From Schmidtea polychroa (taxonomy: Eukaryota): a stretch of 64,000 bases of DNA. Each line of letters opens with the position of its first letter. The first letter of the stretch is position 1. A model generated the notes under the pieces. The model saw only the letters and a program-made list of their open reading frames with translations. It had not been told where the DNA came from and made no database searches. Location of the stretch: assembly GCA_044892525.1 (NCBI GenBank), contig CM097887.1, positions 70,742,001 to 70,806,000 of the forward strand, given 5' to 3'. A program made the translations under genes and the position numbers. Below are positions 28,566 through 45,719 of this stretch, piece by piece.

Positions 28566-28882
28566 CTACAATCGATCGAAATTTCTATTAACGAATGCGA
28601 AATTCACCGGGATTTTCATACAAAATTAAAGGGATTTATCACATCGATTTTCTGTTTTCAACCGACCATTGCTTGACGAATGCAAATTGACTATTGATTA
28701 TTAAATTATATTAGGAACTAAGTAGAGAAAATCAAAATGTAGATAATAGGAAAATTGAGGATATATATAAATAAAGGAGATAAAGTAGTCAAATTAAATA
28801 ATTAACAATGGTTAAAGAAACCAATTAACGAATTAACTATTAATTTACTACATATTATTAAAACATTACTTTTCCAACAGCT

Positions 28883-29368: not shown

Positions 29369-29959
29369 AACGGCCGGCGATGTAACAGCAAGTATACGAT
29401 GTTTGAACAAGAATGCATGAAATTGTTGAGGTAACACGTACTGTTAATGATTCAATCTTTATGTTTATGATAAATAAATTCGTCTTTAAAAAGTTTTGAT
29501 GATTAGGACTAATAAAATTTGCATGACGAATGAATATTTGCGTGTTTGTTTTGTTTTATTTTTTTTTCGGAATCAAATGAAGAGAGGGTTGAATAACGTG
29601 GAATTAGTCCCAATATAGACTGCAGGGGTACAAACCGAGCCACCTTCGGGCGGTACGTCTTATTGTAAGAACCCGTTGGGAGGGGATAACTGATCAACCC
29701 AAGTAAGAAGCGTAGGGCGGGGTACCATCGCATATGATGAGAAGTTTTTGCGACATGACTGATCACCATGCAAATGTAGAAATGGATCATCGCGATCGTC
29801 GTGCGTTTTGAGCAAGGGGGGAAAGGGGAAACACTCCCAAGCGGTAAAGATTAAGTCGACAAATTAAAAGTAGATAGAGAAAATGGTAAACTAGAGTAAA
29901 AGAAGAAAAGAGAAATAGAAGCATGCAGAGCGAGGAATATTAAAGCCGAGCTGTCGAAT

Positions 29960-30610
29960 AATCCAGCCGGTCAAGGAGGAAGATTGAGCTGTTGAATAGT
30001 GCCAGCCAGTCGTAAGGTCGAGTTGTGAAAAGTCCAACCGATCAGGAAGGAGGAAGATTGAGCTGTTGAATAGTGCCAGCCAGTCGTAAGGTCGAGTTGT
30101 GAAAAAGTCCAACCGATCAGGAAGGAGGAAGATTGAGCTGTTGAATAGTGCCAGCCAGTCGTAAGGTCGAGTTGTGAAAAGTCCAACCGATCAGGAAGGA
30201 GGAAGATTGAGCTGTTGAATAGTGCCAGCCAGTCGTAAGGTCGAGTTGTGAAAAGTCCAACCGATCAGGAAGGAGGAAGATTGAGCTGTTGAATAGTGCC
30301 AGCCAGTCGTAAGGTCGAGTTGTGAAAAAGTCCAACCGATCAGGAAGGAGGAAGATCGAGCTGTTGAATAGTGCCAGCCAGTCGTAAGGTCGAGTTGTGA
30401 AAAGTCCAACCGATCAGGAAGGAGGAAGACTGAGCTGTTGAATAGTGCCAGCCAGTCGTAAGGTCGAGTTCTGAAAAGTCCAACCGATCAGGAAGGAGGA
30501 AGATTGAGCTGTTGAATAGTGCCAGCCAGTCGTAAGATTGAGTTGTTGAATAGTCCAACCGATCAGAAGGAAGAAGATTGAGCTGTTGAATAGTGCCAGC
30601 CAGTCGTAAA
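29960..30610. repeat. Tandem array of about 9 copies of a 74-75 bp unit in the 5' leader
   Basis: Anchor AGTCCAACCGATCAG at 30031, 30106, 30180, 30254, 30329, 30403, 30477 and 30552, plus a degenerate first copy. Confidence 0.95.
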
Positions 30611-31865
30611 GGCCTAGAAAAGCGAGAGATAGCAGTTAAGCTACAATGAGATAATATTTAAATTACTAGTGATATGGAATATTAAAGCTAGCTAGAACAA
30701 ATTGAATGTAATTTTGAAAATTCGAGTTTAGAGAGGAAATAAACGAGCTCGTGGAAAAGAAAATAGGATTATAATGAAAAAGGAAAGGGAAGAAGGAAAC
30801 GAATTAAAGAGATAATAGAAAATAAAGAATAGATGAAACGATGATAATGAGTAAAGAGGAAAGTAACTAACTAACTAAAGGGATCCCAGTGAAGTAGAGA
30901 AACTCTACGGAATATTTTTTTTGGTTAAACCGGGAAAATGCATTTTATTGGTTCCAGAGTAGAACCGAGCGTAATAATAGTGAATATGAAAAGTAAAATA
31001 GCGATAACAGCGCAAAAGGATTAGGAAAATGAAAGGGGGGTAATAAGCAGAGACCGACAACGACCTATTTTTACTATAATTGATAACGAATAGATAATTA
31101 TTACGACTTTATAGATAATTGTTACTACCCCATATAGATAATTTAAAATCGACGGAAAATACGGGCTGATGGGATATTATAACCCGCAGAAAGGATTTCA
31201 CAAAAGATAGGGGAAGCACAAACAGAAACCTAAAAGGTGTCTGTTTTTGAACGTTGTAGAAAGAATGATGAAGTCGTGTAAGCAAATGCAACACGAGATC
31301 ATTTTTTCATTTTAGATATCAAGCCAATCCAGCCAACCAAGACAATCCAGAACCTGCACAAAAGGAATTCGAAGAAATCGACAATCAACCAAGGATAAAT
31401 CCATTCAGAACCCGCACCGAGAGACACAGCAACCGGAAGACTCCCGAACGGAAGAAGTATTAGCAGCCATCTGCCAAGGATTAGAAACACAATCAGAACC
31501 GAACGCGACCAATTCAATAGCCGCTAATTACCAAGAAGCGTAAGAAAGGAATCACGGATAAACCCAATCTTAGATCTTCAAGTAAGCCAGGAGACGTATT
31601 ATTTTCAGGAGACGAATTACAACAACTCAAAAGAGGACGATCCATTAAACATCAAAGAGGAATATCACAAGGATCCAGAAGAACCAATCAAGTACCCATA
31701 TTTGACCAAGAAAATCTCGGATATACCCCTAGTCGATCTCGAAGTAGAGAAAGTCTGTCCGATATCACTAATAGTTTAGCAACGTCAACCGAAGAATTAT
31801 CAGCCCAAAGTTTAGTCACATCGTTAGACAATTTAAAAGAAACAGACGAACCTAGAACACCAATC

Positions 31866-34800
31866 ATGACGAATGTCGTAAAAACCGACGAGTATAAAGA
31901 GAAGTTCAGAGGAGAACCGTTCAACGGAAATGCAAACAAGCTAGCAACGTTCATAACTAATTTTGAAGTTTATATCACTGTGTGTGGATGGACACCCGAA
32001 GCAATTAGTAAAAGGATGCCGTTGTTTTTGTGCGATAGTGCATTAGAGGTATATTTAGAAGCTAAAGAGAGAGACACGAAATTAGAAAAGTGGGAAGATA
32101 TTAAAACATTCCTGAAGAAAACCTTCGGAGCCAGTAAGCCAATCAACCAGGCGTTGGGCGAACTAGCAAATAGGAAACAAAGAGCAAACGAATCGATAAC
32201 ATTATATGCCAGTGAATTGCGGAGATTAGCGAAGAAAGCAATGAATGGAAAATTACCCGAAGAAAATCTGATCGGTTATTTCATAGAGGGATTACGCCGA
32301 GAAGAAGTAAGAGCCTCAGTAGGTTGTCAAATGTGCAAAACATTAGAGGAAGCCATAGATTGGGCTACAAGATGCGAGCTCCACCTTCCAGCTCAAATGA
32401 ATATTATGCAAGAGGAGGGAAGGATAGCGACAGCAATAGCGAAAGCGGATAACGGAGATAACAACAATCAAGAACCGAAAATGAATCAATTTATACCAGG
32501 AGCGCACCAAATTTTCAAACCACCACAAGGACGATCAAACGGGAATAATGGTAATCGTAACAACCCGAATAATGAGAACAATTTCAATAATCGGCGAAAT
32601 ATGAACGATAACAAGCAGTGCCGAACATGCGGTAAACCAGGACACTGGGACAGAGATTGTTATAGAAATTCAAATTGTAATCGTTGCGGACGGCGTGGAC
32701 ATACCGAAAATGTATGCCAATTGCGAGGCTGTTTTAACTGTGGTCAGCCAGGTCACATCTCCAGAGATTGCCGAGAAAGGGGCCAACAACAACGACCACC
32801 ACAGCGAAATAATAATTGTATAGCGAATCCGCAACGACAAAGTAACCCTAACGAAGGAAAACAAATGAACGTTATGCAGGAAATTTCGCAGATGAAACAG
32901 ATGATGCAACAAATGATGAGACCAAGACAAGAATCAGCACCACAACAAACCCAGAATATACGTATGATGAGGAGTACCGAAAATCTCAACAATTATGAAG
33001 TGCATCAACATGTACAAGAATGGCAAAGGCTACAGGCCGAGGAAGAGAGGATAAAACAAGAACGCAACCAACAACGACAAGAACAACCATTGCGAATAAA
33101 TATGATGAAGTTAGTAAAAGACATGAAGAGCCAGTATTGCTACAATTACGGGAAAAGCCCAAGGGTAGTACCCACGACTGAACCAGAAAAGGTAAAAGAA
33201 ATAACAACGGAAATGGAAACAGAGAATTCAACCACGATTTTAAAAGGAAACCAGAGAATTCAGAAAATATTCTGGAAAAAGATAAAGGATAAAATCGAAA
33301 AAGAACATAATAAAGCGAAAACCGAGACAGAAGATGAAAATAACAAGAGCAAGGAACAAACCAGTCAACTAAACCACCAAATGCTACAAGAATCAGAATC
33401 AGAAGAAACAACAATATTCGAAAGAAAGAAACTAAAGAGAGTACCAAGGATGAGAAACTTGCAAATCAATATGATGAAAAGGACAAAAGATGTAGCATCG
33501 TCAGACGAAGAAGAAGATTATGTAAGTAGTTTGGGTGGAGAAATACTACAGCCGAATGAAATAAGCGAACCCCCAAAAGGGGAAATCAAAGAGGAAGAAA
33601 GCGGAAACGAGATAACCAGTGAAAGTGAAAACGAAGATATCGAAATAAAGTTGAGAAAAGCAAGGGAGGAAGCGATAAAACAGGTAGCCGAAATACTCCC
33701 AGTAGTAGTGAGAAACCAAGAGTTCATCGACGTAATACCATTCAGGCGATTCGTGCAAAAAGTGATGAAATTGGAAAGAAACGAGAAAGATCTAATACCA
33801 AATGAGGAAAAATCAATTATAAAAAATTATATGGAAAAAATGAAGCAGGCCGATACCACGCGGTATGTAATAAAAATTGGAACGAGTAGAGGACTTGAAA
33901 GAATGTGGATAAAAAATACAGTCACCGACGAACTTTTCGATTGGATACGAGAGCATTTGGGAAGTTCGAGAAAGAAAGAATATCTGTATCAATACCAAGG
34001 AGAACAGATCAAACCAGATATGCACTTAGTAGATGCACTAATATGGCCAGGAGAAACGCAAATACTGAAGTTGCATAAAGAAAAACAACCAGCCAACCTT
34101 TACGATTGGGCTAAAGATGCCAAGGCAGAATATGATTTTAATATCAAATTGAAATTAGAACAAATAAAACAATGTACTCTGAGACGAAACCTGGATAAGC
34201 TGATCAAACAAATTCAAGAACAAGTAGAAGACAACTGGGATTTACTCATCACCAGACGAGCCCCAGCCATGTACGAACTAATGAGCCGGTTGCGAGATAC
34301 AGAAATGCTCCGAATGAGTGATTGGAGAACCATAAATTTGATCCACAAATATGGAAGGTTAAAAGAAACCCAGCCACAGAGGTTAGAAATAACCATATGG
34401 TTACCGAACGAAGAAAAACGACGAATAAAAATGAGCAATCAGAGTACAGTAGATGACTTGGTATCAAAAATAAACCAAGAGATAACGGAAAAGGTACGTA
34501 GCGAAAGTAGTGATGGTATGGTGGATGATGTAGTCATGATGTACGATAAGATAATATTACGAGCGGAGGACGACACCTCGTTAAGCGAAATGGGTATGTG
34601 GGACAATCACCAGATAATCAGGATAGTACCAATGGATGAATTTCGAACAAGAGATGTAACCTATCAAAAAGAAATACGAGACCGGATGAAAACGTTATAT
34701 CAAAAATCTACGGAAATAATTAAAATCCACCAACAATGGTTAAAAGAAAAAGAACTACAAGGAAAAATCACGAAATTAAGCACCAGATCCTGCAGACGAA

Positions 34801-36893
34801 CCCCATGGGAAAGAGTGTGGAATGCAGAAAGTAAGGAATGGGAAATCCGGAAAGGAACCTTCGTGGAAACAGACATTGGTGAGACAGAAAGTGAATCGGA
34901 GGAAGAAGAAGAGGAACCTCCAAAATATGAAGAGGAAGCAAGGGAACAGACATCAGATGACGAAGGCGAGACGGATGTCACATCAGAAAGCGAAAATGAA
35001 GCGAGACATATTCATGCAATGAGGAAAAAGGAACGTGAATATGCTGATATGGACGGCGAGGAAGCGACGGAAGCAAGAGAACGAGAAGAGAAAGAAAGAT
35101 ATAAACAATTAGGCGATATCTTAGCAATGGGAGCGAAAAATCAAAAACGCCAAGTAGTAGCGTTGGCTAACATCATCTTAAAGACATCAGAGAATATCCA
35201 CAATCTGAGAGGAATGGCAAAGGCAATAGAGGAATACCGGCAATATAATGAATGGTATCCAGAACAGCTAGAACAAATTATTCGAAAATGGAGAAATCAG
35301 GAATGGGCACAAGACACCCAGGAGAGGTATCACATCCGAATCAAGTATCCGGACAAGAGCATCGAGGAACTAGAGGTGCATCCAACAACAAAAATTAGAG
35401 AATTAAAAAAGAAATTAGCATATGAAACTCCATTCCATCTGCAACTGTTCGGAAAATCACTAGACGATAATGCAGACGTCGGGATAACACCCATGAGATT
35501 GGAAGAGACAAATGTATTAACAATGGCAGAAACGTTGGGAAAACCGTTAAAAAGGAAAAGTAAAATTATTAAACCAACAAAAGGCAGTTTGAGTACTCCA
35601 AGTCCGAACAAAGCACCAAGTAAATCTAATGAAACTGAAGAAGTTGAAGAGATAATCCTGGAAGATAGTGACGATGAACCAGGAGAAAGATCACCGCTAT
35701 TAGTGAGATGGCCGACAGGAGCCGAAATGTGGACTAATAACCAGCCATCAACGAGTTATCAACAACCAACGAAACTGAACATCAAAGAAATCATCGACAA
35801 TACTACGGAAACCGAAACGGATGAACAATTCCAGAAGCAAAGAGAACCAACGAAAGTAACACCAGAAAGTCAAACCGACAAAATAATAGACGAATGGAAT
35901 GAGTGGCTAAGAAATAACGATAGCTCATTACCCAGAACGGATAACGAAAGAAATCCGAATTACGAAAATACCAGAGAAGCCGGAACGATGATGGAAAAAC
36001 GGGCAAAAGGAAGACCCAAGAAACAAGGAGAAAAGTCTGAGTTCAAAACCAAAGAACAATTAAAGCAAGAACAAGGGCAAGTTCGATTAGAAAAATTGGA
36101 TAAAATAGTATGGGATCTAAAGGAAGCCCAACCAACGATCGAAAGAGGAGAAAAATGGATACGAGAATTGTTAAAAGATATGTTAATAATAACAAACCCA
36201 CAACTTAGACGTTTGTGGCAACGGAAAGTAGCCAGTACGGAAGCTAGACAATTATGGCACACCATTTCGGGGATAATCCCAAAGTTAATCAAAGAGAAAA
36301 CGAAAACCACCAAAACGGATTGGGACGAAACAAAGAAAGTGATTGAGCAGCTCACGACAAATGCAAACGATGACGAACATCACCTAGTGGTAATCACGTA
36401 TTTGATGTATAATTTGATGGGACTAGCTGCGAGGAAAATACCAAATAAACAATTTGCAAATCATGTGGAAATGACCGTTTCAATCATAGAGAATACTATT
36501 GAACCACATATTATTCGTGCCGGAGGATGGAAAAGACTGATACAAGCGCCACGGAAAAATGAGCAAGAAAGGTCGATGCAAGTTAGATTGAAAAAACTGT
36601 TAAATGAACTAGAATGGGAACTACCGATGAAAGATCCCGCAAGCAGAAAAGCATCAATAAATTCGTTAATGATGACTATGATGATATGGATGTTGTGCAC
36701 AAGTGGAGCAACGGGTTTCACCATCTACGATTGTGATAACATGATAATGAGAGATAAATACTCATTGAGAGACATAGAAGAATGCAGACAAGCCTCACCC
36801 AACAAATTGGACATCGTGAGAACAAAAGTTACTTACCATGTATATCAAGAATCAGATTTCATCAGAACGCAAGCAAGGGAATGCGTAGTATAA
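31866..36893 (+). CDS. gag: Polyprotein part 1: Gag with 3 CCHC knuckles, ubiquitin-like domains, Bcl-2-like domain, signal peptide and start of the glycoprotein
   Basis: Retrotransposon Gag pattern (RKQRANESITLYASELRRLA...YFIEGL) and knuckles CRTCGKPGHWDRDC, CNRCGRRGHTENVC, CFNCGQPGHISRDC. It ends at a TAA (36891-36893) that is in frame with the next ORF. Confidence 0.93.
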   Translation: MTNVVKTDEYKEKFRGEPFNGNANKLATFITNFEVYITVCGWTPEAISKRMPLFLCDSALEVYLEAKERDTKLEKWEDIKTFLKKTFGASKPINQALGELANRKQRANESITLYASELRRLAKKAMNGKLPEENLIGYFIEGLRREEVRASVGCQMCKTLEEAIDWATRCELHLPAQMNIMQEEGRIATAIAKADNGDNNNQEPKMNQFIPGAHQIFKPPQGRSNGNNGNRNNPNNENNFNNRRNMNDNKQCRTCGKPGHWDRDCYRNSNCNRCGRRGHTENVCQLRGCFNCGQPGHISRDCRERGQQQRPPQRNNNCIANPQRQSNPNEGKQMNVMQEISQMKQMMQQMMRPRQESAPQQTQNIRMMRSTENLNNYEVHQHVQEWQRLQAEEERIKQERNQQRQEQPLRINMMKLVKDMKSQYCYNYGKSPRVVPTTEPEKVKEITTEMETENSTTILKGNQRIQKIFWKKIKDKIEKEHNKAKTETEDENNKSKEQTSQLNHQMLQESESEETTIFERKKLKRVPRMRNLQINMMKRTKDVASSDEEEDYVSSLGGEILQPNEISEPPKGEIKEEESGNEITSESENEDIEIKLRKAREEAIKQVAEILPVVVRNQEFIDVIPFRRFVQKVMKLERNEKDLIPNEEKSIIKNYMEKMKQADTTRYVIKIGTSRGLERMWIKNTVTDELFDWIREHLGSSRKKEYLYQYQGEQIKPDMHLVDALIWPGETQILKLHKEKQPANLYDWAKDAKAEYDFNIKLKLEQIKQCTLRRNLDKLIKQIQEQVEDNWDLLITRRAPAMYELMSRLRDTEMLRMSDWRTINLIHKYGRLKETQPQRLEITIWLPNEEKRRIKMSNQSTVDDLVSKINQEITEKVRSESSDGMVDDVVMMYDKIILRAEDDTSLSEMGMWDNHQIIRIVPMDEFRTRDVTYQKEIRDRMKTLYQKSTEIIKIHQQWLKEKELQGKITKLSTRSCRRTPWERVWNAESKEWEIRKGTFVETDIGETESESEEEEEEPPKYEEEAREQTSDDEGETDVTSESENEARHIHAMRKKEREYADMDGEEATEAREREEKERYKQLGDILAMGAKNQKRQVVALANIILKTSENIHNLRGMAKAIEEYRQYNEWYPEQLEQIIRKWRNQEWAQDTQERYHIRIKYPDKSIEELEVHPTTKIRELKKKLAYETPFHLQLFGKSLDDNADVGITPMRLEETNVLTMAETLGKPLKRKSKIIKPTKGSLSTPSPNKAPSKSNETEEVEEIILEDSDDEPGERSPLLVRWPTGAEMWTNNQPSTSYQQPTKLNIKEIIDNTTETETDEQFQKQREPTKVTPESQTDKIIDEWNEWLRNNDSSLPRTDNERNPNYENTREAGTMMEKRAKGRPKKQGEKSEFKTKEQLKQEQGQVRLEKLDKIVWDLKEAQPTIERGEKWIRELLKDMLIITNPQLRRLWQRKVASTEARQLWHTISGIIPKLIKEKTKTTKTDWDETKKVIEQLTTNANDDEHHLVVITYLMYNLMGLAARKIPNKQFANHVEMTVSIIENTIEPHIIRAGGWKRLIQAPRKNEQERSMQVRLKKLLNELEWELPMKDPASRKASINSLMMTMMIWMLCTSGATGFTIYDCDNMIMRDKYSLRDIEECRQASPNKLDIVRTKVTYHVYQESDFIRTQARECVV

Positions 36894-38475
36894 AAAAAGG
36901 TACTCGCATATTACTGTGGACAATATTCGTATTCGACTCTTATACTACCCGGTCTGGATAAAGAAATCGTATCAATACAACGAGAGGATTGTAAAGAGCT
37001 ATTTAGAACCGGAGCGCTAAAAATGCATAACGGAGTGACAATTCACGGACAAACTGGAATGATTAAAACCGAAAGTGTTTACGTATCCGGAAAAGTAAAA
37101 TCATCAGATGGGTCATGTAACGGGGGGACGTATACGATCCGAGGCGAGGTAATATCGGGAGTTGTAGTGATCGAGTCTTACACGGTCGAATTAAAAGAAT
37201 ACGAAGCGCAATTTGACGCAAATAATTACCAAATGAAGACCAACCCAGCGTGTAAAGCTACAGAAAACGTATGCAGGACAGGAGTATCAACTATAATCTA
37301 TGAAGCTAATACCCAAAAATGCCGACTCCAACTGTTAAAAAGTGCTTTGTTCAATGAAGTAAAAGGAGAAATATATGAGAACGAGAACGACGAGGATGGA
37401 AACGACAGAGTGAGAATGCGAAATGGAAAACCAATGCCACCATCTCCCAGAGAAAAGAGACTTTCAACGCAGAAGACACCAACAGCATTAATCACAGACG
37501 ATCCAGATCTAGGTATGAGATTTATCAAAGAGAAAGAAACCACCAAATGTGACAGTATAGTATATAAAACCAATTACGCAGGTATCTACATGTCGAGACA
37601 AATAATCGATAGAGCAGTGGGAAAGATAGCAACGGAGGACGTAAAACTATACTTATATGCAAATAATAAAATGGATTTTCTATTTCATCGTGGACAAACG
37701 ACCTTGCAAAAAGTATATTACGATCTGATACAAAACGATTGTTCATTGAATAAAGAAATATTGAAAACAAAGCTAGCTATTGCGATAACGCACCCCGATA
37801 ACACGATGCCATCACTCCCATTACCAGATGGACACTTTGGTAGAATGGTAGGAGAAGTGATGTACACATACCAGTGTACCAAGACGTATGCACGAATGCC
37901 AGAAAAATCCATACTACCCGAAAAGAGATGTGCAAATGAATTAGAAATTCGTTATAAAGGACAAAATCGATTCGTCCAACCAGTCACTAGAATTATGAAT
38001 CCAGTGGGTTTCTACCCAAATCTCTTTAACTGTTCTAATGCATACGGACCTTTGTATGAAAGACCCGATGGGAAATGGATGATGTTACCGGGAAAAACCA
38101 TATCCGAGGAACCCAAGAAATTTGGATTAATAGAACTCGCCACAGAGCTGGATTTCAAACCTATAGACGTGTCAAACGGTGGTATGTATTCCCCAGAAGA
38201 TCTAGAAACAGCACGACTTAACGTACTCTTCCCAGCCAGACGAGAATCCATTTTGTCTAATATGGTCACAATAACTGGGGGCACAAACTATCAATCAGGC
38301 CCGAATTACGAGCTGCTATTATCGCCAGACCATTTTCAACAAGCTACGTCAAACATGATGAAAGCAATGTGGGGAAGATTCTTAGTTTTTGGACAAATGA
38401 TGGCCGGGATATTAGGGATCATACTCATAATTCAGATAGTCAGAGTAATACTAACACAAATGTTAGCTTGTTTCG
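36717..38475 (+). other. Chuvirus-like viral envelope glycoprotein domain (ectodomain plus TM), spanning the in-frame TAA
   Basis: FTIYDC after a hydrophobic segment, then ECVV..YYCG..SYS, DGSCNGGTY, CDSIVYKTN, KLYLYANNKMDFL, GEVMYTYQC, CANELEIRY...FVQPVTRI, GGMYSPEDL...LFP and WGRFLVFG followed by a TM helix. This is the Cys and motif order recalled for Chuviridae glycoproteins. Confidence 0.8.
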
Positions 38476-41400
38476 ATATATACAAGCGGGAAAAGAAAGT
38501 TAATTGGAAAATGATAGTAGGTTTCTTACCATTTTTAGCTAAGACCATGGTATTACATGGCCACTCAAAAGACATCCATCGGATAAAGCGATTGATAAAA
38601 ATATTAACAAAGATTAAAGGAACCGACGAAGAAGTAGGCAGACGATTCCGGAAAGTAATGTACGATGAAGCAACAAGACGACAATTGAAAAAGAATAAGC
38701 CAAAATTCTTGGACCGATTTAGAAGCCAATCATCTAACAGCGATAGTGACGACGATGATAACGGGAACGATAAATGTCTTTATCCAAACAGAAACCCAAA
38801 CGAAAAACCAATGGAAACGGCACCATATTGGGAAAAGGAAAAGACAAACACCTGGATCGCCAATGGAAGCTATATACCACCGGATATCGTGGGACCACAA
38901 ACAGCTTTGACCATGACACAAAATATGTATCCGCAATTACCGAGTCAACCCGGTATGCATTATATGCCAACACGACGTACCAAAAGTGTAGATCAAGCAG
39001 ATGACGTAAGAACAATAGCAGCGATGAGTTTACCTGGAGGTCCAGCAGTGACAGTCATGATCCAAATCAATGGTCAAGAAACCAATGCTATGATAGACAC
39101 AGGAGCTAATGTATCAGCGATAGCGATTAATCAAATTCCCAGTAAACACTGGAAAGATATCGAATCAACAACAATTCACATCATAGCATGTAGTAAAGAA
39201 ACAGTGGACGTGGTCGGAAGATGGTGGACTACATTGAGATACCAGGACAACGAAATTGAAACGTATTTGGCAGTAATACCAAAACTTAGCGTACCATGCA
39301 TAATCGGAACGGATTTGATGCCAGAATTGTTAAAAGAAGTCGTAATTGACTTAACAACCATGTGTTTAAAAGACAAAACCGGTAGAATATGCAAAATGAA
39401 TGCAGTCATCAGATGTCCAGAAAAAATAATAGTACCAGCAAAATCGCAGATGATTTGTCAGATAAAAGTGGATACGGGTATGGAAGGAGAAGTTATCTTT
39501 GAACCAAGCAAGTCATTCGAAAAGCGACGAGAATTACCACTCGCAAGAGAAATAATCACAATAAACCAAGAAGGAGTGATACCGCTCAACATCACGAATT
39601 TCGAAGAGGAAGACAAAATCATTTATGAGAACGAAAAATTGGGAAGATTGACCCCAATGATGGACATAGAATTACCGAAAGTGACCAACGAGATGATCAA
39701 AGATGATGAATTATGGACAATAGATAGTATGTTGTTGACGAATGATGAAAAGAAAAAATTACACCGATTGTTGGTAGAATATAAAGATATATTCGCCATC
39801 TCAGACTTAGACTTGGGTACATGCGATGTTACCCTACATGCAATACCCCTCATAGATGAAACTCCAATTGCATTAAGACCATACAAGCTAGCAGAAATGC
39901 AAAAAGAAATAGCCGAAGCAGAAGTACAAAAGATGCTAGACGCAAAAGTAATCGAACCAAGTTGCTCACCCTGGCAATTCCCAGTGGTCATGGTAAAAAA
40001 GAAAGATGGCACCCAACGATTCTGTATCGATTATCGGAAGTTAAACGCAGTGACCAAGAGAGATACCTATCCATTGCCGGACATCAATGAGATGTTATTG
40101 ATGTTGCAAGGGGCAGCATATTTTACTTCTCTAGATCTAAAAAGTGGATACTGGCAGGTTAAAGTCAAAGATGAGGACAAAGAGAAAACAGCTTTCACGT
40201 TGGGACGAGATCTATATCAATTCAGGAAAATGCCATTTGGACTGACTAACGCACCAGCATCATTTCAACGGTGTATGAACTTTGTCACCCATGGAATCAA
40301 ACAATGTATGGTATATATTGATGATTTACTAATCTATTCAGCGACATTTGAACAACATCTGGAAGATATCCGAAACGTATTTATTAGATTAAGACAGTGG
40401 AAACTCAAACTCAAACCATCAAAATGCGATTGGGCAAAGGAAAAAGTCACGTTTTTAGGACACATAGTGTCAGCTAAAGGAAAGGAGCCAGATCCAAGAA
40501 ACATTGAGAAAATAAAAACATGTCCAGCACCGAAAACTGTCACCCAAGTTCAGGAATTTCTAGGATTATGCGGATACTATCGCAAATTTATCAAAAATTA
40601 TGCAGGAATTGCAAAACCAATCCAGGAACTAGTAAAGAAGGACATTTCGTTCTTATGGGGGAAGGAACAACAAGAGGCGTTTGAAACGCTGAGAGACAAA
40701 CTAATCGAAGCACCTATCCTCGTACACCCAGATTTTAAGAAGCCATTTCTATTGGCAACGGATGCAAGCGGGTACGCGGCAGGCGCGATTCTGGGACAAT
40801 TGGACGATGAGGGAAAAGAGAGAGTAATCGGGTATTACAGTCGAACATTCAAAAAGCACGAAAAGAACTATTCGGTAACAGAACGAGAAGCATTGGCTAT
40901 AATACAAGCTATCAAACACTTCCGATATTTACTATGGGGACATGAGATATGCATAACCACAGACCATCAACCATTAGTGTGGTTAGGGCAACATAAAGAA
41001 GCGTCCAGTAGACTGATGAGATGGGCCATGCAATTGCAAGAATACTCCCCATTTATAAAATTTAAAGCGGGAAGAGCAAATGCCAACGCCGATTGTATGT
41101 CAAGATTTATTTTCCCAGATTTGGTGGATTCAGAAATGCAACGCATATGCTTAATAGTAGCGGAAGATTTGGATTTCTGTCAATTGCGAAAGGACCAACA
41201 AGAGGACGCGGAATTAAAACAAATTATCGATTATATAAAAACCGGACAGACAGATGTATATGCGAAAGACCAAAAATTAAAAGAACATATGGATAAACAC
41301 CGACACCGATATATTATAGAGAAAGATTGGTTGCTGATAATGGATGGGGAAAAACGATTAATGTGTATACCGGAAAACCGACGAAAAGAGTTACTAACGC

Positions 41401-44400
41401 AATATCACGATGGGAGATTGGGAGGACATATGTCATCGAAAAAGACGTTAGCAAGAATGAAACAGAAATATTTTTGGCCTACGTTAACGGAAGATGTAAC
41501 CGAATGGGTAAAAAATTGTCTAACTTGTGCAACCAGGAAGAATACGGGATCGAAATGGAAAGCACCTTTAACGCCAATGCCAGTACCAATAGAACCAATG
41601 ACAATGATATCCATGGACGTAGTTGGTCCACTACCAGAGTCAGATAAAGGAAACGTTTACATTCTAGTGATCACAGACTTTCTTACGAAATTCCCAGAAG
41701 CATTCGCGATGCCAGACCAAAAAGCTAAAACAATCGCAAAAATTTTGGTAGAAGAGATATGTTGCCGATATGGAACACCAAAACAAATCTTAACCGATCA
41801 GGGAACAAATTTTATGAGTGAGATAATGAGCGAAGTAACAAATTACTTCAAAATAGCAAAACTAAGAACATCTCCATACCACCCTCAAACCAATGGGATG
41901 ACGGAAAGATTTAATGGAACACTTATACAAATGTTATCAAACTACGTTGACCGTCACCAACGAGATTGGGACGAATATATAAACCTATGTCTTATGGCGT
42001 ACAGAATGTCGATTCACGCATCAACGAAAATGAGCCCATTCAAATTAATGTACGGAAGAGAATGTAATATGCCAATGGACCTGGAATACCAACCACCGAT
42101 ATCGCAGTATATGGAGATCGATGATTATGTTACGAAATTCAAGGAAAGAATGCAAGAAATTTGGGAAACTGCGGGATTAAATATCAAGTTCTACCAGGAA
42201 AGTTATAAAGATTTACACGATCGAAAGAAAAACGTGAAGCAACATACGTTCCAAACAGGTGATTGGGTAATGATAGAAACCCCGGAATTAATTCCAGGAA
42301 CCACAAAAAAGTTACAACGCAACGGAAAAGGACCATATGAGATCTTATTCGTAGGCGAAACTAATGTAAGAGTGAAATTGGTAAATAACCCCTTTACCAG
42401 ACCAATATACGTAAACGTGGCACGATGCAAATCAATTCCAAAAACAGCCACTAGTCAACCAGAAGGCCGTACATTAACCACACGTTCGCAAACCTACCGA
42501 ATGAACATGATGCAACAACTCGCAGAACCGATCACTGGACGATTAGGTATCCAACCATCAGAAGCGGAAAAGATTGTAAAGGAGGTAAAAATTAAAATAC
42601 CTGGATGGGCAAAAGATCGATTAGATTTCGAAATATTAGGAGGATTATTGACGATGATCGAGAACTATGCAAATAGAGAAAGGACACACCCATTATTGCG
42701 AGTAGTCAAAAGCCAATGGCCAATATTATTTACAATAACAGATCATTACGGAGACACACCATTACACAAACTCATGAAAGTAGGTAACAACGAGCAAATA
42801 CTAGAAACAATAGAAGCATTTCACGACTGCAAGCGATCAACAGAACAAACAAACAACCAAGGTTACACCCCATTAATGATAGCCGCAAACAGAGGCAAAA
42901 CAAAAGACATTATAACCGCATTACTCGATACCGGATCGAAAATAACTACACAAGACCACGAGCGGAAAAACGCTCTACATCATGCTATCAGAGGGAGAAG
43001 TACCGAGGCGTTCACGTCATTGATGGAACTACTATCATATGAGGACAATCGGGAAGTCGGAAACATGTATGATGGATTGCTAACAGCGATCAAAGAAAAA
43101 CTGACGACAATTACCGGAATATTAATTACATGGAGAAATCCAATTCGAAACGATTATATGATCAACGTAAACGAAGCGTTCACGAGAGGAGAGAACACGC
43201 TGATGAGAGAAGCTATGAAAGGACATCAGTTATTCGAAATCCCGAATCAATTACTAGAACGAGGGATAAAATTCACAAATCATAAAGACGAACAGTTAGC
43301 AAAAAAGCGAATCGACACATTCGAAAAATCCCTATTCCAATTTACTAACCAAGTACGAAATAAATATTGGGAAACGGTAAGTGTGTTATATATGATGGAC
43401 ACAATGAATAACATCCGCGAGAATTACCTGGATATTATCCAAATACTTACAGCAGAGGAACGAATCAATAATCCAAACGGAAAGAAAATGAAAATAAAGT
43501 ATGAGAAATCCAGGGAATCAAAGTCAACAACGAACCAAACGGTCACAAACAACGTCATCGAAACCAAATCAATGAGTATAGATCAAGAGGCAATAATACG
43601 CAAAGCAAAAGAAGTGTTCTTTGAGGAAATGCTAGAGCTGCCAGACGAAATAATATTGTCCAAAATAATAAAAGCCGTACACACATACGCAAGAGATCAA
43701 ACCACGGATTTAGATATCGGGAAAATCAAAACCTTCTTGCCTCGAGCATTTACGATGGTAACGAAGGATTCCAGAACACCCCTACAACAAGCAATACTAG
43801 CGGCGAAAGAAAATAGAGCAATAACGATCGTGAGAATCCTTGGAGAGATGGGCGAGGAAACCAACACGAAAAATGAACAAGGTGAAACCGCCATGATGTA
43901 TGCAGCTATAACGAAAATACACCCAAAAACACTCCACATCCTACATCAATCAGGATCGAAACTAGACGAAAAGTCCAATGAAGGAAATTCCACCTTGGAC
44001 TGGGCAACCATACAGCCAAACTTAGAAATGATCAGATTTATTTGCAAAAATGCGACAAAAGAAGAAGTTGAAAATATGTGCAAAAACACATCTCAGTTTC
44101 AATGGAATACGGTACGGAAAAATCTAGAAGCAATGAAATTATTATTAACCTGGAGAGTACCACAAAATAATAAATATGCGATAAATGTAAACGAATTCTA
44201 CGAAAACGGAGAAAATGCGATGGTAAAGAATACCCTAACTAAGGGGGGGACGCCTAAAATAATTTTAATAGTATTAAATAGAGAAGACCTAAAATTCACG
44301 CAAAATCAGAACGAGCAACAACGAATTGGGAAACATCGTCGTATGCAATTGAGAGAGTTAGTTAAAGAATGGAATAGAAAGAGACATGCTGCAACGGGTA

Positions 44401-45719
44401 GAAAAGAGTTTGAATTCGAAGCAAAATTAGCAAGAAACAGAGTGCTAACAGCATATCGCAGATTATTGAACGATATAAATGTCGAGGACGACATTTTAAA
44501 CGACAGCGGGGGAGATAAACACGATGACAATAACGGAAAAGGCCGAAAGGAGGATAAAGAGAAAAGAGAACAGGAGGAGGGTAAACCGGAAAACAAGGAT
44601 TCGGATACGAAAAGAGAGGGAAACAGCCCGGGAACTAAGACCAAAGAGGAGGAAAAATCGAATAATGGAAAACAGAGGGTATGCCTACCTTTCACTAACA
44701 AAGAAATAGAGACAAATATGATATTAATGATAATTATGCTTACCATGATAGAGTTAGTAACAGCTCATGGAGGGACGAGGACGATAAAAGAAACCAAAGA
44801 AGCGGAGAATCAAGATAGCAAAGAGGACGAACTAAAACAAGAAAAGAAAAAGCAAGCACAAGAGCAGCAGTGGGATTTAAAGGAAGAATGGGACTTAAAG
44901 GAAAGGTGCATACTAGGAAGATGCATGTCTAGAGCGTATCAGAAACTAGTACTGATAAATGAGGACACAGAACCAATAACAGAAGTAAGAATACAAGAAG
45001 CATACCGAAACCGAGACGGGAAAAGAATAACGAACGTTAAAGGAAAAGAGGTACACCTAGGAAAAGGTGGCGAAGTAGTAATAACGCAGCTCCAACCAAG
45101 AAAAGAGCACAAAGTCTGTATTTCAAGATTGGGACCGGGTGAGAGATGCCATCAATATGTGACGCAGCAGCAGCCCCCGAAGGAATATACGGTTTGTATC
45201 TGGAGAAACGAATCAAAAAGAGAATGCCGACGATACCCGGGGAAAAGAGGAAAGAAAAGGAAAAACCACGACGAAAAGGACGAAGGAGGAAAGCACAAGA
45301 AAACCGGCGAGGAAGCTCAGGACAACTATGTTTCGGAGGAAGAGATGGAAAAAATACAAAAGATGGCAAAGGAGGGTATGAACGAGGAAATAGCAAGAAT
45401 ACGGGAAATGATGAAAGGAAATGGCAAAAGAGGGAACGAGAAAAGTACAGAAGCAATATCAACATTAACAAACCAGGAAAAACCAGAGAGTATAAGCGTG
45501 AAGCAGATGATGTGGATCAGTGGGATAATAATAACAGGGGCATTCCTAATCATAACGGGGGGAACAATAAAAATAATTAAGGATAAACGACATCGCGGAG
45601 AACTAGAGATGACTCGAATCAGAAATTTCCAACATCGAGTGAAACGACCAAGTGATATCAAACAAGAACAGTGGGTGGAGGCCTGGAACGCTCAGCGCCC
45701 TCCAAACTCACGTATATAG
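36894..45719 (+). CDS. pol: Polyprotein part 2: rest of glycoprotein, protease, RT, RNase H, integrase, ankyrin repeats and membrane-anchored C-terminal unit
   Basis: Open frame from 36894 (the ORF track starts at ATG 37023). Motifs MIDTGANVS, YIDDLLI, LATDASG, H..RLGGH...C..C, MDVVGP / TDQG / ERFN and GPYEI. Confidence 0.95.
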   Translation, partial: KKVLAYYCGQYSYSTLILPGLDKEIVSIQREDCKELFRTGALKMHNGVTIHGQTGMIKTESVYVSGKVKSSDGSCNGGTYTIRGEVISGVVVIESYTVELKEYEAQFDANNYQMKTNPACKATENVCRTGVSTIIYEANTQKCRLQLLKSALFNEVKGEIYENENDEDGNDRVRMRNGKPMPPSPREKRLSTQKTPTALITDDPDLGMRFIKEKETTKCDSIVYKTNYAGIYMSRQIIDRAVGKIATEDVKLYLYANNKMDFLFHRGQTTLQKVYYDLIQNDCSLNKEILKTKLAIAITHPDNTMPSLPLPDGHFGRMVGEVMYTYQCTKTYARMPEKSILPEKRCANELEIRYKGQNRFVQPVTRIMNPVGFYPNLFNCSNAYGPLYERPDGKWMMLPGKTISEEPKKFGLIELATELDFKPIDVSNGGMYSPEDLETARLNVLFPARRESILSNMVTITGGTNYQSGPNYELLLSPDHFQQATSNMMKAMWGRFLVFGQMMAGILGIILIIQIVRVILTQMLACFDIYKREKKVNWKMIVGFLPFLAKTMVLHGHSKDIHRIKRLIKILTKIKGTDEEVGRRFRKVMYDEATRRQLKKNKPKFLDRFRSQSSNSDSDDDDNGNDKCLYPNRNPNEKPMETAPYWEKEKTNTWIANGSYIPPDIVGPQTALTMTQNMYPQLPSQPGMHYMPTRRTKSVDQADDVRTIAAMSLPGGPAVTVMIQINGQETNAMIDTGANVSAIAINQIPSKHWKDIESTTIHIIACSKETVDVVGRWWTTLRYQDNEIETYLAVIPKLSVPCIIGTDLMPELLKEVVIDLTTMCLKDKTGRICKMNAVIRCPEKIIVPAKSQMICQIKVDTGMEGEVIFEPSKSFEKRRELPLAREIITINQEGVIPLNITNFEEEDKIIYENEKLGRLTPMMDIELPKVTNEMIKDDELWTIDSMLLTNDEKKKLHRLLVEYKDIFAISDLDLGTCDVTLHAIPLIDETPIALRPYKLAEMQKEIAEAEVQKMLDAKVIEPSCSPWQFPVVMVKKKDGTQRFCIDYRKLNAVTKRDTYPLPDINEMLLMLQGAAYFTSLDLKSGYWQVKVKDEDKEKTAFTLGRDLYQFRKMPFGLTNAPASFQRCMNFVTHGIKQCMVYIDDLLIYSATFEQHLEDIRNVFIRLRQWKLKLKPSKCDWAKEKVTFLGHIVSAKGKEPDPRNIEKIKTCPAPKTVTQVQEFLGLCGYYRKFIKNYAGIAKPIQELVKKDISFLWGKEQQEAFETLRDKLIEAPILVHPDFKKPFLLATDASGYAAGAILGQLDDEGKERVIGYYSRTFKKHEKNYSVTEREALAIIQAIKHFRYLLWGHEICITTDHQPLVWLGQHKEASSRLMRWAMQLQEYSPFIKFKAGRANANADCMSRFIFPDLVDSEMQRICLIVAEDLDFCQLRKDQQEDAELKQIIDYIKTGQTDVYAKDQKLKEHMDKHRHRYIIEKDWLLIMDGEKRLMCIPENRRKELLTQYHDGRLGGHMSSKKTLARMKQKYFWPTLTEDVTEWVKNCLTCATRKNTGSKWKAPLTPMPVPIEPMTMISMDVVGPLPESDKGNVYILVITDFLTKFPEAFAMPDQKAKTIAKILVEEICCRYGTPKQILTDQGTNFMSEIMSEVTNYFKIAKLRTSPYHPQTNGMTERFNGTLIQMLSNYVDRHQRDWDEYINLCLMAYRMSIHASTKMSPFKLMYGRECNMPMDLEYQPPISQYMEIDDYVTKFKERMQEIWETAGLNIKFYQESYKDLHDRKKNVKQHTFQTGDWVMIETPELIPGTTKKLQRNGKGPYEILFVGETNVRVKLVNNPFTRPIYVNVARCKSIPKTATSQPEGRTLTTRSQTYRMNMMQQLAEPITGRLGIQPSEAEKIVKEVKIKIPGWAKDRLDFEILGGLLTMIENYANRERTHPLLRVVKSQWPILFTITDHYGDTPLHKLMKVGNNEQILETIEAFHDCKRSTEQTNNQGYTPLMIAANRGKTKDIITALLDTGSKITTQDHERKNALHHAIRGRSTEAFTSLMELLSYEDNREVGNMYDGLLTAIKEKLTTITGILITWRNPIRNDYMINVNEAFTRGENTLMREAMKGHQLFEIPNQLLERGIKFTNHKDEQLAKKRIDTFEKSLFQFTNQVRNKYWETVSVLYMMDTMNNIRENYLDIIQILTAEERINNPNGKKMKIKYEKSRESKSTTNQTVTNNVIETKSMSIDQEAIIRKAKEVFFEEMLELPDEIILSKIIKAVHTYARDQTTDLDIGKIKTFLPRAFTMVTKDSRTPLQQAILAAKENRAITIVRILGEMGEETNTKNEQGETAMMYAAITKIHPKTLHILHQSGSKLDEKSNEGNSTLDWATIQPNLEMIRFICKNATKEEVENMCKNTSQFQWNTVRKNLEAMKLLLTWRVPQNNKYAINVNEFYENGENAMVKNTLTKGGTPKIILIVLNREDLKFTQNQNEQQRIGKHRRMQLRELVKEWNRKRHAATGRKEFEFEAKLARNRVLTAYRRLLNDINVEDDILNDSGGDKHDDNNGKGRKEDKEKREQEEGKPENKDSDTKREGNSPGTKTKEEEKSNNGKQRVCLPFTNKEIETNMILMIIMLTMIELVTAHGGTRTIKETKEAENQDSKEDELKQEKKKQAQEQQWDLKEEWDLKERCILGRCMSRAYQKLVLINEDTEPITEVRIQEAYRNRDGKRITNVKGKEVHLGKGGEVVITQLQPRKEHKVCISRLGPGERCHQYVTQQQPPKEYTVCIWRNESKRECRRYPGKRGKKRKNHDEKDEGGKHKKTGEEAQDNYVSEEEMEKIQKMAKEGMNEEIARIREMMKGNGKRGNEKSTEAISTLTNQEKPESISVKQMMWISGIIITGAFLIITGGTIKIIKDKRHRGELEMTRIRNFQHRVKRPSDIKQEQWVEAWNAQRPPNSRI
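39027..42500 (+). other. pol: Pol core: aspartic protease (DTG at 39096), RT (YIDD near 40313), RNase H, integrase
   Basis: Catalytic residues appear intact. Order and motifs (FCIDYRKLN, FTSLDLKSGYWQV, MPFGLTNAPASFQR) are typical of Ty3/Gypsy. Confidence 0.96.
42745..44260 (+). other. Two ankyrin-repeat modules fused downstream of integrase
   Basis: YGDTPLHKL, QGYTPLMIAA, ERKNALHHAI; then SRTPLQQAI, QGETAMMYAA, EGNSTLDWA. Each block is followed by a similar L.TWR....Y.INVNE...GEN segment. Confidence 0.9.

What the first reader, a model, noticed from the sequence alone, without database searches (positions are those of the whole stretch)
31866..45719. Envelope gene inside gag-pol: a chuvirus-like fusion glycoprotein between Gag and protease in one ~4,617-codon frame
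Seen: one reading frame, apart from a single TAA, runs Gag, accessory domains, a hydrophobic segment (36652-36716), a ~550-aa Cys-rich ectodomain, a TM helix (~38379-38475), PR, RT, RH and IN. Established: env genes of retroviruses and errantiviruses lie 3' of pol in a separate ORF, and chuvirus-type glycoproteins are known to have been captured by BEL/Pao elements in mosquitoes. Inference: this is an independent capture by a Gypsy element with a flavivirus- or alphavirus-like topology. Gag would stay cytosolic ahead of an internal signal peptide, the glycoprotein would enter the ER lumen, and Pol would be made as the glycoprotein's cytoplasmic tail until the element's protease frees it. That would be an unusual, potentially infectious retrovirus-like system. 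Giant planarian Burro elements are described, but I cannot tell whether this arrangement has been reported for them.
Basis: partly seen in the sequence, partly recalled or inferred. Interest (0 to 1): 0.95.

Follow-up and report, generated by a model that had tools for sequence, protein, structure and literature searches.

The report
Burro retroelement with in-frame envelope gene
This is a young copy of a giant planarian-type "Burro" Gypsy retroelement whose single huge gag-pol reading frame carries a chuvirus/herpes-gB-like membrane fusion glycoprotein between Gag and protease; the feature is real and unusual, but it was already described for Burro elements in 2019.

Summary
One + strand frame (31866-45719, 4,617 codons) has a single internal TAA and no frameshift. 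It encodes, in order: Gag, three CCHC knuckles, about 1,300 aa of unassigned sequence, a signal-peptide-like segment, a glycoprotein ectodomain, a strong TM helix, PR, RT, RNase H, IN and ankyrin repeats.

The frame lies in a 30.5-kb LTR element (24383-54925) with 4,158-bp identical LTRs and a 5-bp target duplication.

The glycoprotein matches Pfam Monjiviricetes_fusion (E=7.6e-60). Its AF2 model (pLDDT 84) hits chu-like virus glycoproteins (E=1.7e-29) and herpesvirus gB (class III).

At least seven relatives, 27-40% identical in Env, keep Env, PR, RT and RH in one protein, six of them also IN. All 14 long relatives keep the internal signal peptide next to the conserved YDC motif. Between two relatives, Env is as constrained as Pol.

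Processing and infectivity remain inferred, and this copy's env is broken once.

Arkhipova and Yushenova 2019 (PMC6431247) already reported env in frame between gag and pol in Burro, with hits to mononegavirus glycoproteins. Novelty: already known. My additions are the class III fold, the retained signal peptide and the evidence of selection.

The parts
24378..24382 (.). Target-site duplication AAATT, 5' copy
   Evidence: The same pentamer flanks the element at 54926-54930.
24383..28540 (+). 5' LTR, 4,158 bp, TG...CA termini. It contains a 250-aa ORF (27254-28006) with no Pfam match.
   Evidence: Self-BLAST gives 100% identity over 4,160 bp with 50766-54925. Termini were read. ORF.
28548..28566 (+). 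Primer-binding-site-like sequence starting with TGG, 7 nt after the 5' LTR
   Evidence: Read directly. The assignment is inferred from its position; no tRNA gene in the window to compare with.
28883..29368 (+). Accessory ORF (161 aa) with a C3HC4 RING finger, upstream of gag
   Evidence: Pfam zf-C3HC4_3, E=3.4e-11.
29941..30641 (+). Array of 74-75-bp tandem repeats in the leader
31866..45719 (+). Giant gag-env-pol gene: 4,617 codons in one frame. Broken once by a nonsense codon (TAA) inside the env part; no frameshifts.
32019..32771 (+). Gag: Retrotrans_gag domain (32019-32300) and three CCHC zinc knuckles (32619-32771)
   Evidence: Pfam E=9.6e-10 and 4.3e-11. Regex for the knuckles. Gag also aligns with the N-terminus of relative P0003.
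32793..36650 (+). About 1,300 aa of Glu/Lys-rich accessory region. Only sub-threshold hints: ubiquitin-like 35334-35438 and Bcl-2-like 36312-36530.
   Evidence: The Bcl-2-like fold was not confirmed (AF2 pLDDT 49.7; no Foldseek hit).
36651..36716 (+). Internal signal-peptide-like segment: basic n-region, Met-rich h-region, small residues. It lies directly before the conserved YDC motif of the mature glycoprotein.
   Evidence: Hydropathy. All 14 long relatives have the same layout, and stand-alone viral-type glycoproteins have it as their N-terminal signal peptide.
36717..38369 (+). Glycoprotein ectodomain (about 550 aa) with a class III, chuvirus-G/gB-like fold
   Evidence: PF24664 E=7.6e-60. 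AF2 pLDDT 84.2. Foldseek against PDB gives gB and against BFVD gives chu-like virus glycoproteins. 838 homologues at E<=1e-3. Conserved cysteines.
38370..38483 (+). Membrane-proximal region and the single TM anchor of the glycoprotein
   Evidence: KD 2.53, the strongest in the frame. A continuous helix in the AF2 model. Conserved in relatives.
38484..39053 (+). Cytoplasmic tail or linker (190 aa) between the TM and the protease; no family match
   Evidence: The equivalent stretch is the least conserved part between relatives (35% identity).
39054..41936 (+). Pol: PR (39054-39329), RT (39993-40469), RNase H (40656-41045), IN (41367-41936). Catalytic motifs are present.
   Evidence: Best solved relative is Ty3 Gag-Pol 7q5b, E=1.5e-116.
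42789..44039 (+). Ankyrin repeats fused after the integrase
   Evidence: Pfam Ank_2, E=1.4e-17.
44703..45581 (+). C-terminal stretch bounded by two moderately hydrophobic segments (44703-44777 and 45498-45581). It may correspond to the second membrane-protein module seen in relatives.
   Evidence: It has no sequence similarity to the relatives' C-termini. Inconclusive.
46325..47713 (+). Accessory ORF (462 aa), TRAF-like: RING finger plus MATH domain
   Evidence: Pfam TRAF-mep_MATH, E=6.7e-27; zf-C3HC4, E=1.3e-4.
47907..50538 (+). Three more same-strand ORFs (351, 250 and 222 aa) of unknown function between pol and the 3' LTR
   Evidence: no Pfam hit above threshold.
50768..54925 (+). 3' LTR, identical to the 5' LTR
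54926..54930 (.). Target-site duplication AAATT, 3' copy

Best explanation
The region is the coding core of a recently inserted giant Ty3/Gypsy LTR retroelement of the planarian 'Burro' type (24383-54925). Its single gag-pol frame contains a captured class III viral fusion glycoprotein, of the chuvirus/Monjiviricetes G type and fold-related to herpesvirus gB. The glycoprotein lies between the Gag-plus-accessory part and the protease.

Proposed mechanism. Shown: the glycoprotein keeps its own signal peptide as an internal hydrophobic segment and keeps one TM anchor. Inferred: Gag and the accessory region are translated in the cytosol. The internal signal then targets the ribosome to the ER. The ectodomain is translocated into the lumen and cut from the upstream part by signal peptidase. 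The TM stops transfer, so PR-RT-RH-IN-Ank is made on the cytosolic face as the glycoprotein's tail until the element's aspartic protease releases it. The family would thus be an envelope-bearing, retrovirus-like agent with a flavivirus-style polyprotein topology.

This copy has one nonsense codon inside env. As it stands, it would make only the Gag-accessory product from this frame.
For: Element: identical 4.16-kb LTRs, TG..CA termini and a 5-bp TSD. G+C is 0.39 against flanks of 0.25-0.29.

Domains and motifs. Ty3 affinity.

Glycoprotein identity: PF24664 at 203 bits; 838 homologues; AF2 pLDDT 84.2; gB hits with probability 1.0; chu-like virus G at E=1.7e-29.

Conserved cysteines: all 11 Cys of the aligned part fall in columns at least 90% conserved.

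Topology: a signal-peptide-like segment directly precedes the YDC motif in the window and in all 14 long relatives. This mirrors the N-terminal signal peptide of stand-alone glycoproteins. One strong TM lies before PR.

Conservation of the arrangement: seven polyproteins, each representing a different 50%-identity cluster, carry Env, PR, RT and RH in one protein, and six of them also IN (the seventh, P0013, is short).

Selection: between two relatives Env is 69% identical (pN 0.185, pS 0.78, saturated). That matches PR-RT-RH-IN (68%) and is far above the flanking accessory parts (35-44%).

Single capture: the embedded Envs form an exclusive clade against 94 stand-alone glycoproteins.

Literature: env in frame between gag and pol in Burro (PMC6431247). 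BURRO1 is transcribed and called active (PMC8532177).
Against: No protein, RNA or particle data exist for this locus, so both cleavage steps and any infectivity are inferred.

The internal signal segment is only moderately hydrophobic. It follows about 1,600 residues of cytosolic protein, which is an unusual context for SRP targeting.

The ectodomain has a single N-glycosylation sequon.

Foldseek TM-scores to gB are low (0.22-0.27) even though the probability is 1.0. This is expected for a multidomain protein modelled in a different conformation, but it is not a rigid-body match.

This copy's env is interrupted once.

I could not test identity with the Burro reference sequences, and I could not confirm the host species.
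Confidence: 0.8

Rival explanations
1. The architecture is the same, but Env (or Env-Pol) is expressed mainly from a spliced subgenomic mRNA. That message would join a 5' exon to an acceptor just upstream of the signal peptide, as in Drosophila gypsy and retroviruses. Co-translational insertion of the full Gag-Env-Pol polyprotein would then not be the main route.
For: Retroviral and gypsy env genes are expressed from spliced mRNAs (established knowledge). In the window, Met codons lie at the start of the hydrophobic core.
Against: A Met before the hydrophobic core is not conserved; P0003, P0005 and P0006 lack it. No stop separates Env from PR in the window or in seven relatives, so Pol would still be fused behind Env. 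The 12.9-16.8-kb contigs of the relatives carry the uninterrupted frame.
Confidence: 0.12
2. The internal TAA is a programmed, leaky stop that sets the ratio of the Gag-accessory product to Env-Pol, rather than a defect.
For: Gammaretroviruses regulate Gag:Gag-Pol by in-frame stop readthrough (established knowledge). The LTRs are identical, so the copy is very young.
Against: TAA is the least leaky stop codon. No known readthrough context follows it, and the downstream 90 nt have no unusual structure (z=0.29). The stop lies inside the ectodomain, not at a domain boundary. All 14 long relatives read straight through the homologous stretch.
Confidence: 0.04
3. The glycoprotein segment is a dead passenger: an endogenous viral fragment that landed in the element and is open here only because the copy is young.
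For: With 100% identical LTRs, an open frame in this copy says little by itself about selection.
Against: The same position and frame are kept in relatives only 27-40% identical. All aligned cysteines, the signal peptide and the TM are conserved. Constraint on Env equals that on Pol. The fold prediction is confident.
Confidence: 0.02

Closest known systems
Burro / GYPSM1 giant Gypsy-like LTR retrotransposons of Schmidtea mediterranea (Grohme et al. 2018; Jurka 2007; Arkhipova and Yushenova 2019, PMC6431247)
   Same: Size over 30 kb. One giant ORF starting with Gag and three CCHC knuckles. An env-like region in frame before PR, with hits to mononegavirus glycoproteins. Ankyrin repeats, and MATH/TRAF and RING motifs. 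An AT-rich host context.
   Different: The frame here has 4,617 codons against 4,873 aa reported for Burro1. MATH/TRAF and RING lie in separate ORFs rather than in the polyprotein. BIR and a dUTPase-like domain were not detected, and the Bcl-2-like match is sub-threshold. The 2019 paper linked the region to gypsy Env (class I-related); the fold evidence here points to class III (gB/chuvirus G). I could not measure sequence identity to the references.
Anakin: mosquito BEL/Pao elements with a captured chuvirus glycoprotein (Dezordi et al. 2020, PMC7642597)
   Same: A chuvirus-type glycoprotein recruited as the env of an LTR retroelement.
   Different: The Pol here is Ty3/Gypsy-type, not BEL/Pao. 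The known BEL/Pao envelope-like genes lie downstream of the polyprotein; this env lies in frame between Gag and PR.
Atlas virus of the hookworm Ancylostoma ceylanicum (belpaovirus; Merchant et al. 2022, PMC9094657)
   Same: An intact LTR element with identical LTRs. Its env, captured from a negative-strand RNA virus, is fused in frame into one polyprotein.
   Different: The order in Atlas is Gag-Pol-Env, with Env last. Its Env is a phlebovirus Gn-Gc with a class II fold, and it sits on a BEL/Pao backbone.
Flavivirus and alphavirus structural polyproteins
   Same: A cytosolic capsid part is followed by an internal signal sequence. This places the glycoprotein ectodomain in the ER lumen, and later parts return to the cytosol (a functional analogy).
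   Different: There is no sequence or fold relationship. Those glycoproteins are class II, and those are RNA viruses without reverse transcription.
Herpesvirus glycoprotein B and chuvirus/Jingchuvirales G (class III fusion proteins)
   Same: Fold-level match, a conserved cysteine framework, a long central helix, and a single C-terminal TM.
   Different: Sequence identity is only 9-12% to gB and 16-20% to chu-like virus G in the structural alignments. Here the cytoplasmic tail continues into a retroelement Pol.

Membership tests
Ty3/Gypsy (Metaviridae) LTR retroelement | Two LTRs with TG...CA termini flanked by a 4-6-bp target-site duplication | tested here: met
   4,158-bp LTRs 100% identical, TG..CA termini, TSD AAATT.
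Ty3/Gypsy (Metaviridae) LTR retroelement | Pol order PR-RT-RH-IN, with RT/RH/IN closest to Ty3-type enzymes | tested here: met
   Pfam domain order. Best PDB hit is Ty3 Gag-Pol 7q5b, E=1.5e-116, ahead of the retroviral enzymes.
Ty3/Gypsy (Metaviridae) LTR retroelement | Gag with a capsid domain and CCHC knuckles | tested here: met
   Retrotrans_gag E=9.6e-10; three CX2CX4HX4C knuckles.
Burro giant planarian retroelements | Total length over 30 kb with multi-kb LTRs | tested here: met
   30,543 bp between the target duplications; LTRs 4,158 bp.
Burro giant planarian retroelements | Env-like region in frame between the Gag/accessory part and PR | tested here: met
   described for Burro in PMC6431247.
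Burro giant planarian retroelements | Accessory motifs: ankyrin, MATH/TRAF, RING, Bcl-2-like, ubiquitin-like, BIR, dUTPase-like | tested here: inconclusive
   Ankyrin, MATH/TRAF and RING are found, the last two in separate ORFs. Ubiquitin-like (E=0.022) and Bcl-2-like (E=0.088) are below threshold. BIR and dUTPase were not detected.
Burro giant planarian retroelements | Nucleotide or protein identity to the Burro1-4/GYPSM1 reference sequences, and a planarian host | not testable with these tools
   No reference sequence or planarian genome is held by the tools. Flank G+C of 0.25-0.29 agrees with the over 70% A/T reported for S. mediterranea (PMC11410931).
Monjiviricetes/chuvirus-type class III fusion glycoprotein (Pfam PF24664) | Profile match above the curated threshold | tested here: met
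   203 bits against a cut-off of 27, E=7.6e-60.
Monjiviricetes/chuvirus-type class III fusion glycoprotein (Pfam PF24664) | Type I layout: signal peptide, ectodomain with the conserved cysteine framework, single C-terminal TM | tested here: met
Monjiviricetes/chuvirus-type class III fusion glycoprotein (Pfam PF24664) | Class III fold | tested here: met
   AF2 pLDDT 84.2. The top 50 PDB hits are all gB (probability 1.0, but TM only 0.22-0.27). BFVD chu-like virus G at E=1.7e-29, TM 0.38-0.41.
Monjiviricetes/chuvirus-type class III fusion glycoprotein (Pfam PF24664) | Trimer formation, fusion loops and membrane-fusion activity | not tested
Errantivirus/retrovirus-style env | Env as a separate ORF 3' of pol, with a class I fusion protein | tested here: not met
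   The ORFs 3' of pol are TRAF-like or of unknown function, not glycoproteins. The env is internal and class III.
Anakin (BEL/Pao plus chuvirus G) | BEL/Pao-type Pol | tested here: not met
   Pfam finds Ty3/Gypsy-type PR, RT/RH and IN domains and no BEL/Pao-specific family. The best solved relative is Ty3.

The most novel reading that the evidence does not exclude
The lineage to which this element belongs may encode two membrane-protein modules in one polyprotein. One is the class III fusogen between Gag and PR. The other is a type I glycoprotein-like module (signal-like segment, Cys- and sequon-rich ectodomain, TM, short basic tail) at the very C-terminus after the integrase. The second module is clear in relatives P0001 and P0003, and P0002, P0005 and P0011 carry a matching pair of C-terminal hydrophobic segments. 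It is only weakly recognisable in the window (44703-45581). If real, this would be a multi-pass, flavivirus-like polyprotein of a reverse-transcribing, enveloped agent that is still active in flatworms and perhaps other hosts. The 2019 description does not mention it.
Probability: 0.2. Interest if true: 0.65.

Novelty: already known. Interest (0 to 1): 0.35.

Why it matters
An envelope gene inside gag-pol breaks the usual retroviral layout. It implies a polyprotein that crosses the ER membrane, with the replication enzymes made as the cytoplasmic tail of the fusion protein. This shows another route by which a retrotransposon can take a fusogen from a negative-strand RNA virus and perhaps become infectious.

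For planarian biology it matters because Burro elements are abundant, transcribed and controlled by PIWI in a stem-cell-based animal.

The arrangement itself was published in 2019. The value added here is threefold. First, the fold is class III (gB/chuvirus G), not gypsy-Env-like. Second, the viral signal peptide is retained as an internal signal. Third, diverged relatives keep the arrangement, and between two of them Env is as constrained as Pol.

Tried and rejected
Searches that found nothing:
- Sequence search of the glycoprotein part against PDB.
- Word-indexed protein search with the glycoprotein part alone. The exhaustive phmmer search was needed to find relatives.
- tRNA scan of the window for a PBS partner.
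- Pfam on ORFs in the higher-GC flanks.

Bcl-2-like domain upstream of the signal peptide. Pfam gives only E=0.088 and PDB phmmer gives nothing relevant. The single-sequence AF2 model has pLDDT 49.7, and its Foldseek search gave no hit at E<=0.001. This is inconclusive, so I do not claim the domain.

dUTPase-like domain between PR and RT, reported for Burro1. It was not detected.

C-terminal post-integrase region. It has no BLAST similarity to six relatives.

LTR ORF and the 49077-49829 ORF. Both are 250 aa long, but they are not paralogues.

Programmed readthrough of the internal stop. I considered it and judged it unlikely.

Terminal repeats in the relatives' contigs. None were found, so those contigs are partial genomic pieces or transcripts.

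My first notebook entry records the bounds of the two query pieces I used. Several script outputs and alignment row names (for example) carry piece lengths, piece references or the sequence next to the break. Together these imply the place of the single break. At no point did I join the two pieces or replace the stop with a residue.
Full report
**Observation**

The + strand frame from 31866 to 45719 holds 4,617 codons plus the terminal TAG. It has one internal stop (TAA) and no frameshift.

Pfam and motif searches give this order:
- Retrotrans_gag (32019-32300)
- three CCHC knuckles (32619-32771)
- about 1,300 residues of Glu/Lys-rich sequence with no significant family
- a glycoprotein matching PF24664 Monjiviricetes_fusion (E=7.6e-60, 203 bits, cut-off 27)
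- RVP with DTGA (39054-39329)
- RVT_1 with YIDD (39993-40469)
- RNase H (40656-41045)
- integrase with HHCC and DD35E (41367-41936)
- ankyrin repeats (42789-44039)

The first is a Met-rich, moderately hydrophobic, signal-peptide-like segment. The second is the strongest hydrophobic stretch of the whole frame (38370-38483, KD 2.53). 'Cys-rich' is an overstatement (about 14 Cys in about 550 aa). However, every one of the 11 Cys I could align lies in a column at least 90% conserved across 70 family members.

**Context**

The frame is the core of an LTR element spanning 24383-54925. Its LTRs are 4,158 bp long and 100% identical, with TG...CA termini and a 5-bp target duplication AAATT. The element's G+C is about 0.39, against 0.25-0.29 in the outer flanks.

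Other features on the same strand:
- a RING-finger ORF (28883-29368)
- a 74-75-bp tandem array (29941-30641)
- a TRAF-like RING+MATH ORF (46325-47713)
- three ORFs of unknown function (47907-50538)
- a 250-aa ORF inside each LTR

The Pol region's best solved relative is Ty3 Gag-Pol (7q5b, E=1.5e-116). The element is therefore of the Ty3/Gypsy type.

**What the glycoprotein is**

A sequence search of PDB found nothing. An exhaustive phmmer search of 1.84 billion representatives found 838 homologues at E<=1e-3. The best roughly 20 are parts of long polyproteins. They are followed by a large set of stand-alone proteins of 640-700 aa at 21-28% identity. One of these clusters is named 'Glycoprotein' in a beetle genome.

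An AF2 model built on a 70-sequence alignment reached pLDDT 84.2. It shows beta-rich domains, a 48-residue central helix and a long TM helix.

Foldseek against PDB returned only herpesvirus gB among the top 50 hits (best E=1.7e-7, probability 1.0). TM-scores are 0.22-0.27, as expected for a flexible multidomain protein. Foldseek against BFVD returned chu-like, mivirus, qin-, xinmo- and rhabdo-like virus glycoproteins (best E=1.7e-29, TM 0.38-0.41), with gB further down the list.

The segment is therefore a class III fusion glycoprotein of the chuvirus/Monjiviricetes type.

**Is the arrangement selected?**

Seven polyproteins from ENA assemblies are 27-40% identical to the window in Env. Each represents a different 50%-identity cluster. 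All seven carry Env, PR, RT and RH in one uninterrupted protein, and six of them also carry IN; the seventh, P0013, is a short protein that ends in RH. One further relative has a Gag-Env ORF followed by a separate Pol ORF.

Between two relatives (L001 and L003), Env is 69% identical (pN 0.185, pS 0.78, saturated). That is as conserved as PR-RT-RH-IN (68%) and much more than the pre-Env (44%), tail (35%) and post-IN (40%) parts.

In a neighbour-joining tree, the window and the 14 embedded Envs form an exclusive clade against 94 stand-alone glycoproteins (no bootstrap). This is consistent with one capture at the base of this retroelement lineage.

**Topology**

Stand-alone glycoproteins begin with Met, then a hydrophobic signal peptide and a few small residues, then the conserved (A/T)YDC motif. 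The window and all 14 long relatives have the same hydrophobic segment and small residues directly before YDC, but deep inside the polyprotein. The captured signal peptide is thus retained as an internal signal.

In the window, one strong TM follows the ectodomain, and no further hydrophobic segment lies before PR.

This supports the following inferred picture. Gag and the accessory region are cytosolic. The ectodomain is luminal and is released from the upstream part by signal peptidase. Pol is cytosolic, made as the glycoprotein's tail until the element's protease cuts it. None of the cleavage steps is shown.

**State of this copy**

Only one gene is broken, the gag-env-pol gene. It is broken once, by a nonsense codon within the env part. 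There are no frameshifts, insertions or deletions relative to the relatives in the aligned stretches.

The stop is TAA. No known readthrough context follows it, and the downstream structure is unremarkable (z=0.29). All relatives read through the homologous stretch. A simple defect, or a sequencing error, is far more likely than programmed readthrough.

**Comparison with what is known**

Arkhipova and Yushenova (2019, PMC6431247) describe Burro/GYPSM1 of Schmidtea mediterranea:
- over 30 kb long
- a 4,873-aa ORF1 starting with Gag and three knuckles
- ankyrin, MATH_TRAF, RING, BIR, BCL2, SUMO-like and dUTPase-like motifs
[quoted passage not shown] The window element fits this description in size, Gag layout, env position, and ankyrin, MATH/TRAF and RING motifs. 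It differs in four details. The ORF is shorter. MATH/TRAF and RING lie in separate ORFs. BIR and dUTPase were not detected. Bcl-2-like and ubiquitin-like matches are sub-threshold only.

I could not test identity to the reference sequences or confirm the host. The AT-rich flanks agree with the over 70% A/T reported for S. mediterranea (PMC11410931). BURRO1 is transcribed, intestine-enriched, up-regulated on smedwi-2 knock-down and called active (PMC8532177).

Other precedents are:
- mosquito Anakin, a BEL/Pao element carrying a chuvirus G; the envelope-like genes of other BEL/Pao elements lie downstream of the polyprotein (PMC7642597)
- hookworm Atlas virus, with a single Gag-Pol-Env polyprotein and a class II Gc placed last (PMC9094657)

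**Verdict**

The arrangement is already published for Burro elements, so the novelty rating is 'already known'.

Increments from this work:
- The fold is class III (gB/chuvirus G), not gypsy-Env-like.
- The viral signal peptide is retained as an internal signal.
- Env is as constrained as Pol between two diverged relatives.
- Relatives at 27-40% identity, found in several public assemblies, share the arrangement.
- Relatives appear to carry a second type I membrane module after the integrase. It is only weakly mirrored in the window.

My first notebook entry and some script outputs and row names (for example) contain bounds, lengths or references of the two query pieces, or sequence adjacent to the break. 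These imply the place of the break.

Noticed in passing
L001 gene product P0001 aa ~3541-4029; P0003 aa ~3524-3865; P0002, P0005 and P0011 likewise; window 44703-45581: Relatives carry a second type I membrane-glycoprotein-like module at the extreme C-terminus of the polyprotein, after the integrase. It has a signal-like segment and a TM followed by a short basic tail. In P0001 the stretch from the signal-like segment to the C-terminus holds 14 Cys and 11 N-glycosylation sequons. The window has two weaker hydrophobic segments in the same relative position. Between them lies a Lys/Glu-rich stretch, and there is no sequence similarity to the relatives.
   Followed up: partly
P0001 aa 3354-3446; P0005 aa 848-940; P0003 aa 1821-1911: Relatives carry a second, DDI1-type aspartyl protease domain (PF09668/PF13975) in addition to the retroviral-type PR. 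Its position varies: after IN, or between Env and PR. Pfam does not detect it in the window element.
   Followed up: no
L001 15113-16390; L003 14249-15688: An ORF with an RNase_T (3'-5' exonuclease) domain lies downstream of pol in two related contigs.
   Followed up: no
window 28883-29368 and 46325-47713: Two accessory ORFs with RING fingers flank the giant frame. The downstream one is TRAF-like (RING plus MATH). In published Burro1 these motifs are reported inside the polyprotein.
   Followed up: partly
window 27254-28006 and 53639-54391: A 250-aa ORF lies inside each 4.16-kb LTR. It has no Pfam match and is not related to the equally long ORF at 49077-49829.
   Followed up: partly
window 29941-30641: An array of about nine 74-75-bp tandem repeats lies in the leader between the RING ORF and gag.
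   Followed up: no
window 47907-50538: Three same-strand ORFs (351, 250 and 222 aa) lie between the TRAF-like ORF and the 3' LTR. Only sub-threshold Pfam hints were found.
   Followed up: no
window ~20000-24380 and 54926-56000: DNA directly flanking the element has a higher G+C (0.33-0.39) than the outer flanks (0.25-0.29). The ORFs tested there have no Pfam hits. It may be an older repeat into which the element inserted.
   Followed up: partly
window 550-1527: Arrays of 21- and 33-bp tandem repeats (TTCTAAAAATAT... units) lie in the left flank.
   Followed up: no
window 5554-5725, 17277-18249, 60743-60961, 61130-61311: Runs of N. I left them untouched. The long 'ORFs' listed at 17199-18487 are artefacts of one such run.
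   Followed up: no
window, disordered loop of the ectodomain model (within 36717-38369): A furin-like R-x-K-R motif sits in the only long low-confidence loop of the AF2 model. It is not conserved in relative P0001. The ectodomain has only one N-glycosylation sequon.
   Followed up: partly
window 30000-50000: There is a very strong excess of A over T on the coding strand (AT skew 0.24-0.44) across the whole internal region of the element.
   Followed up: no
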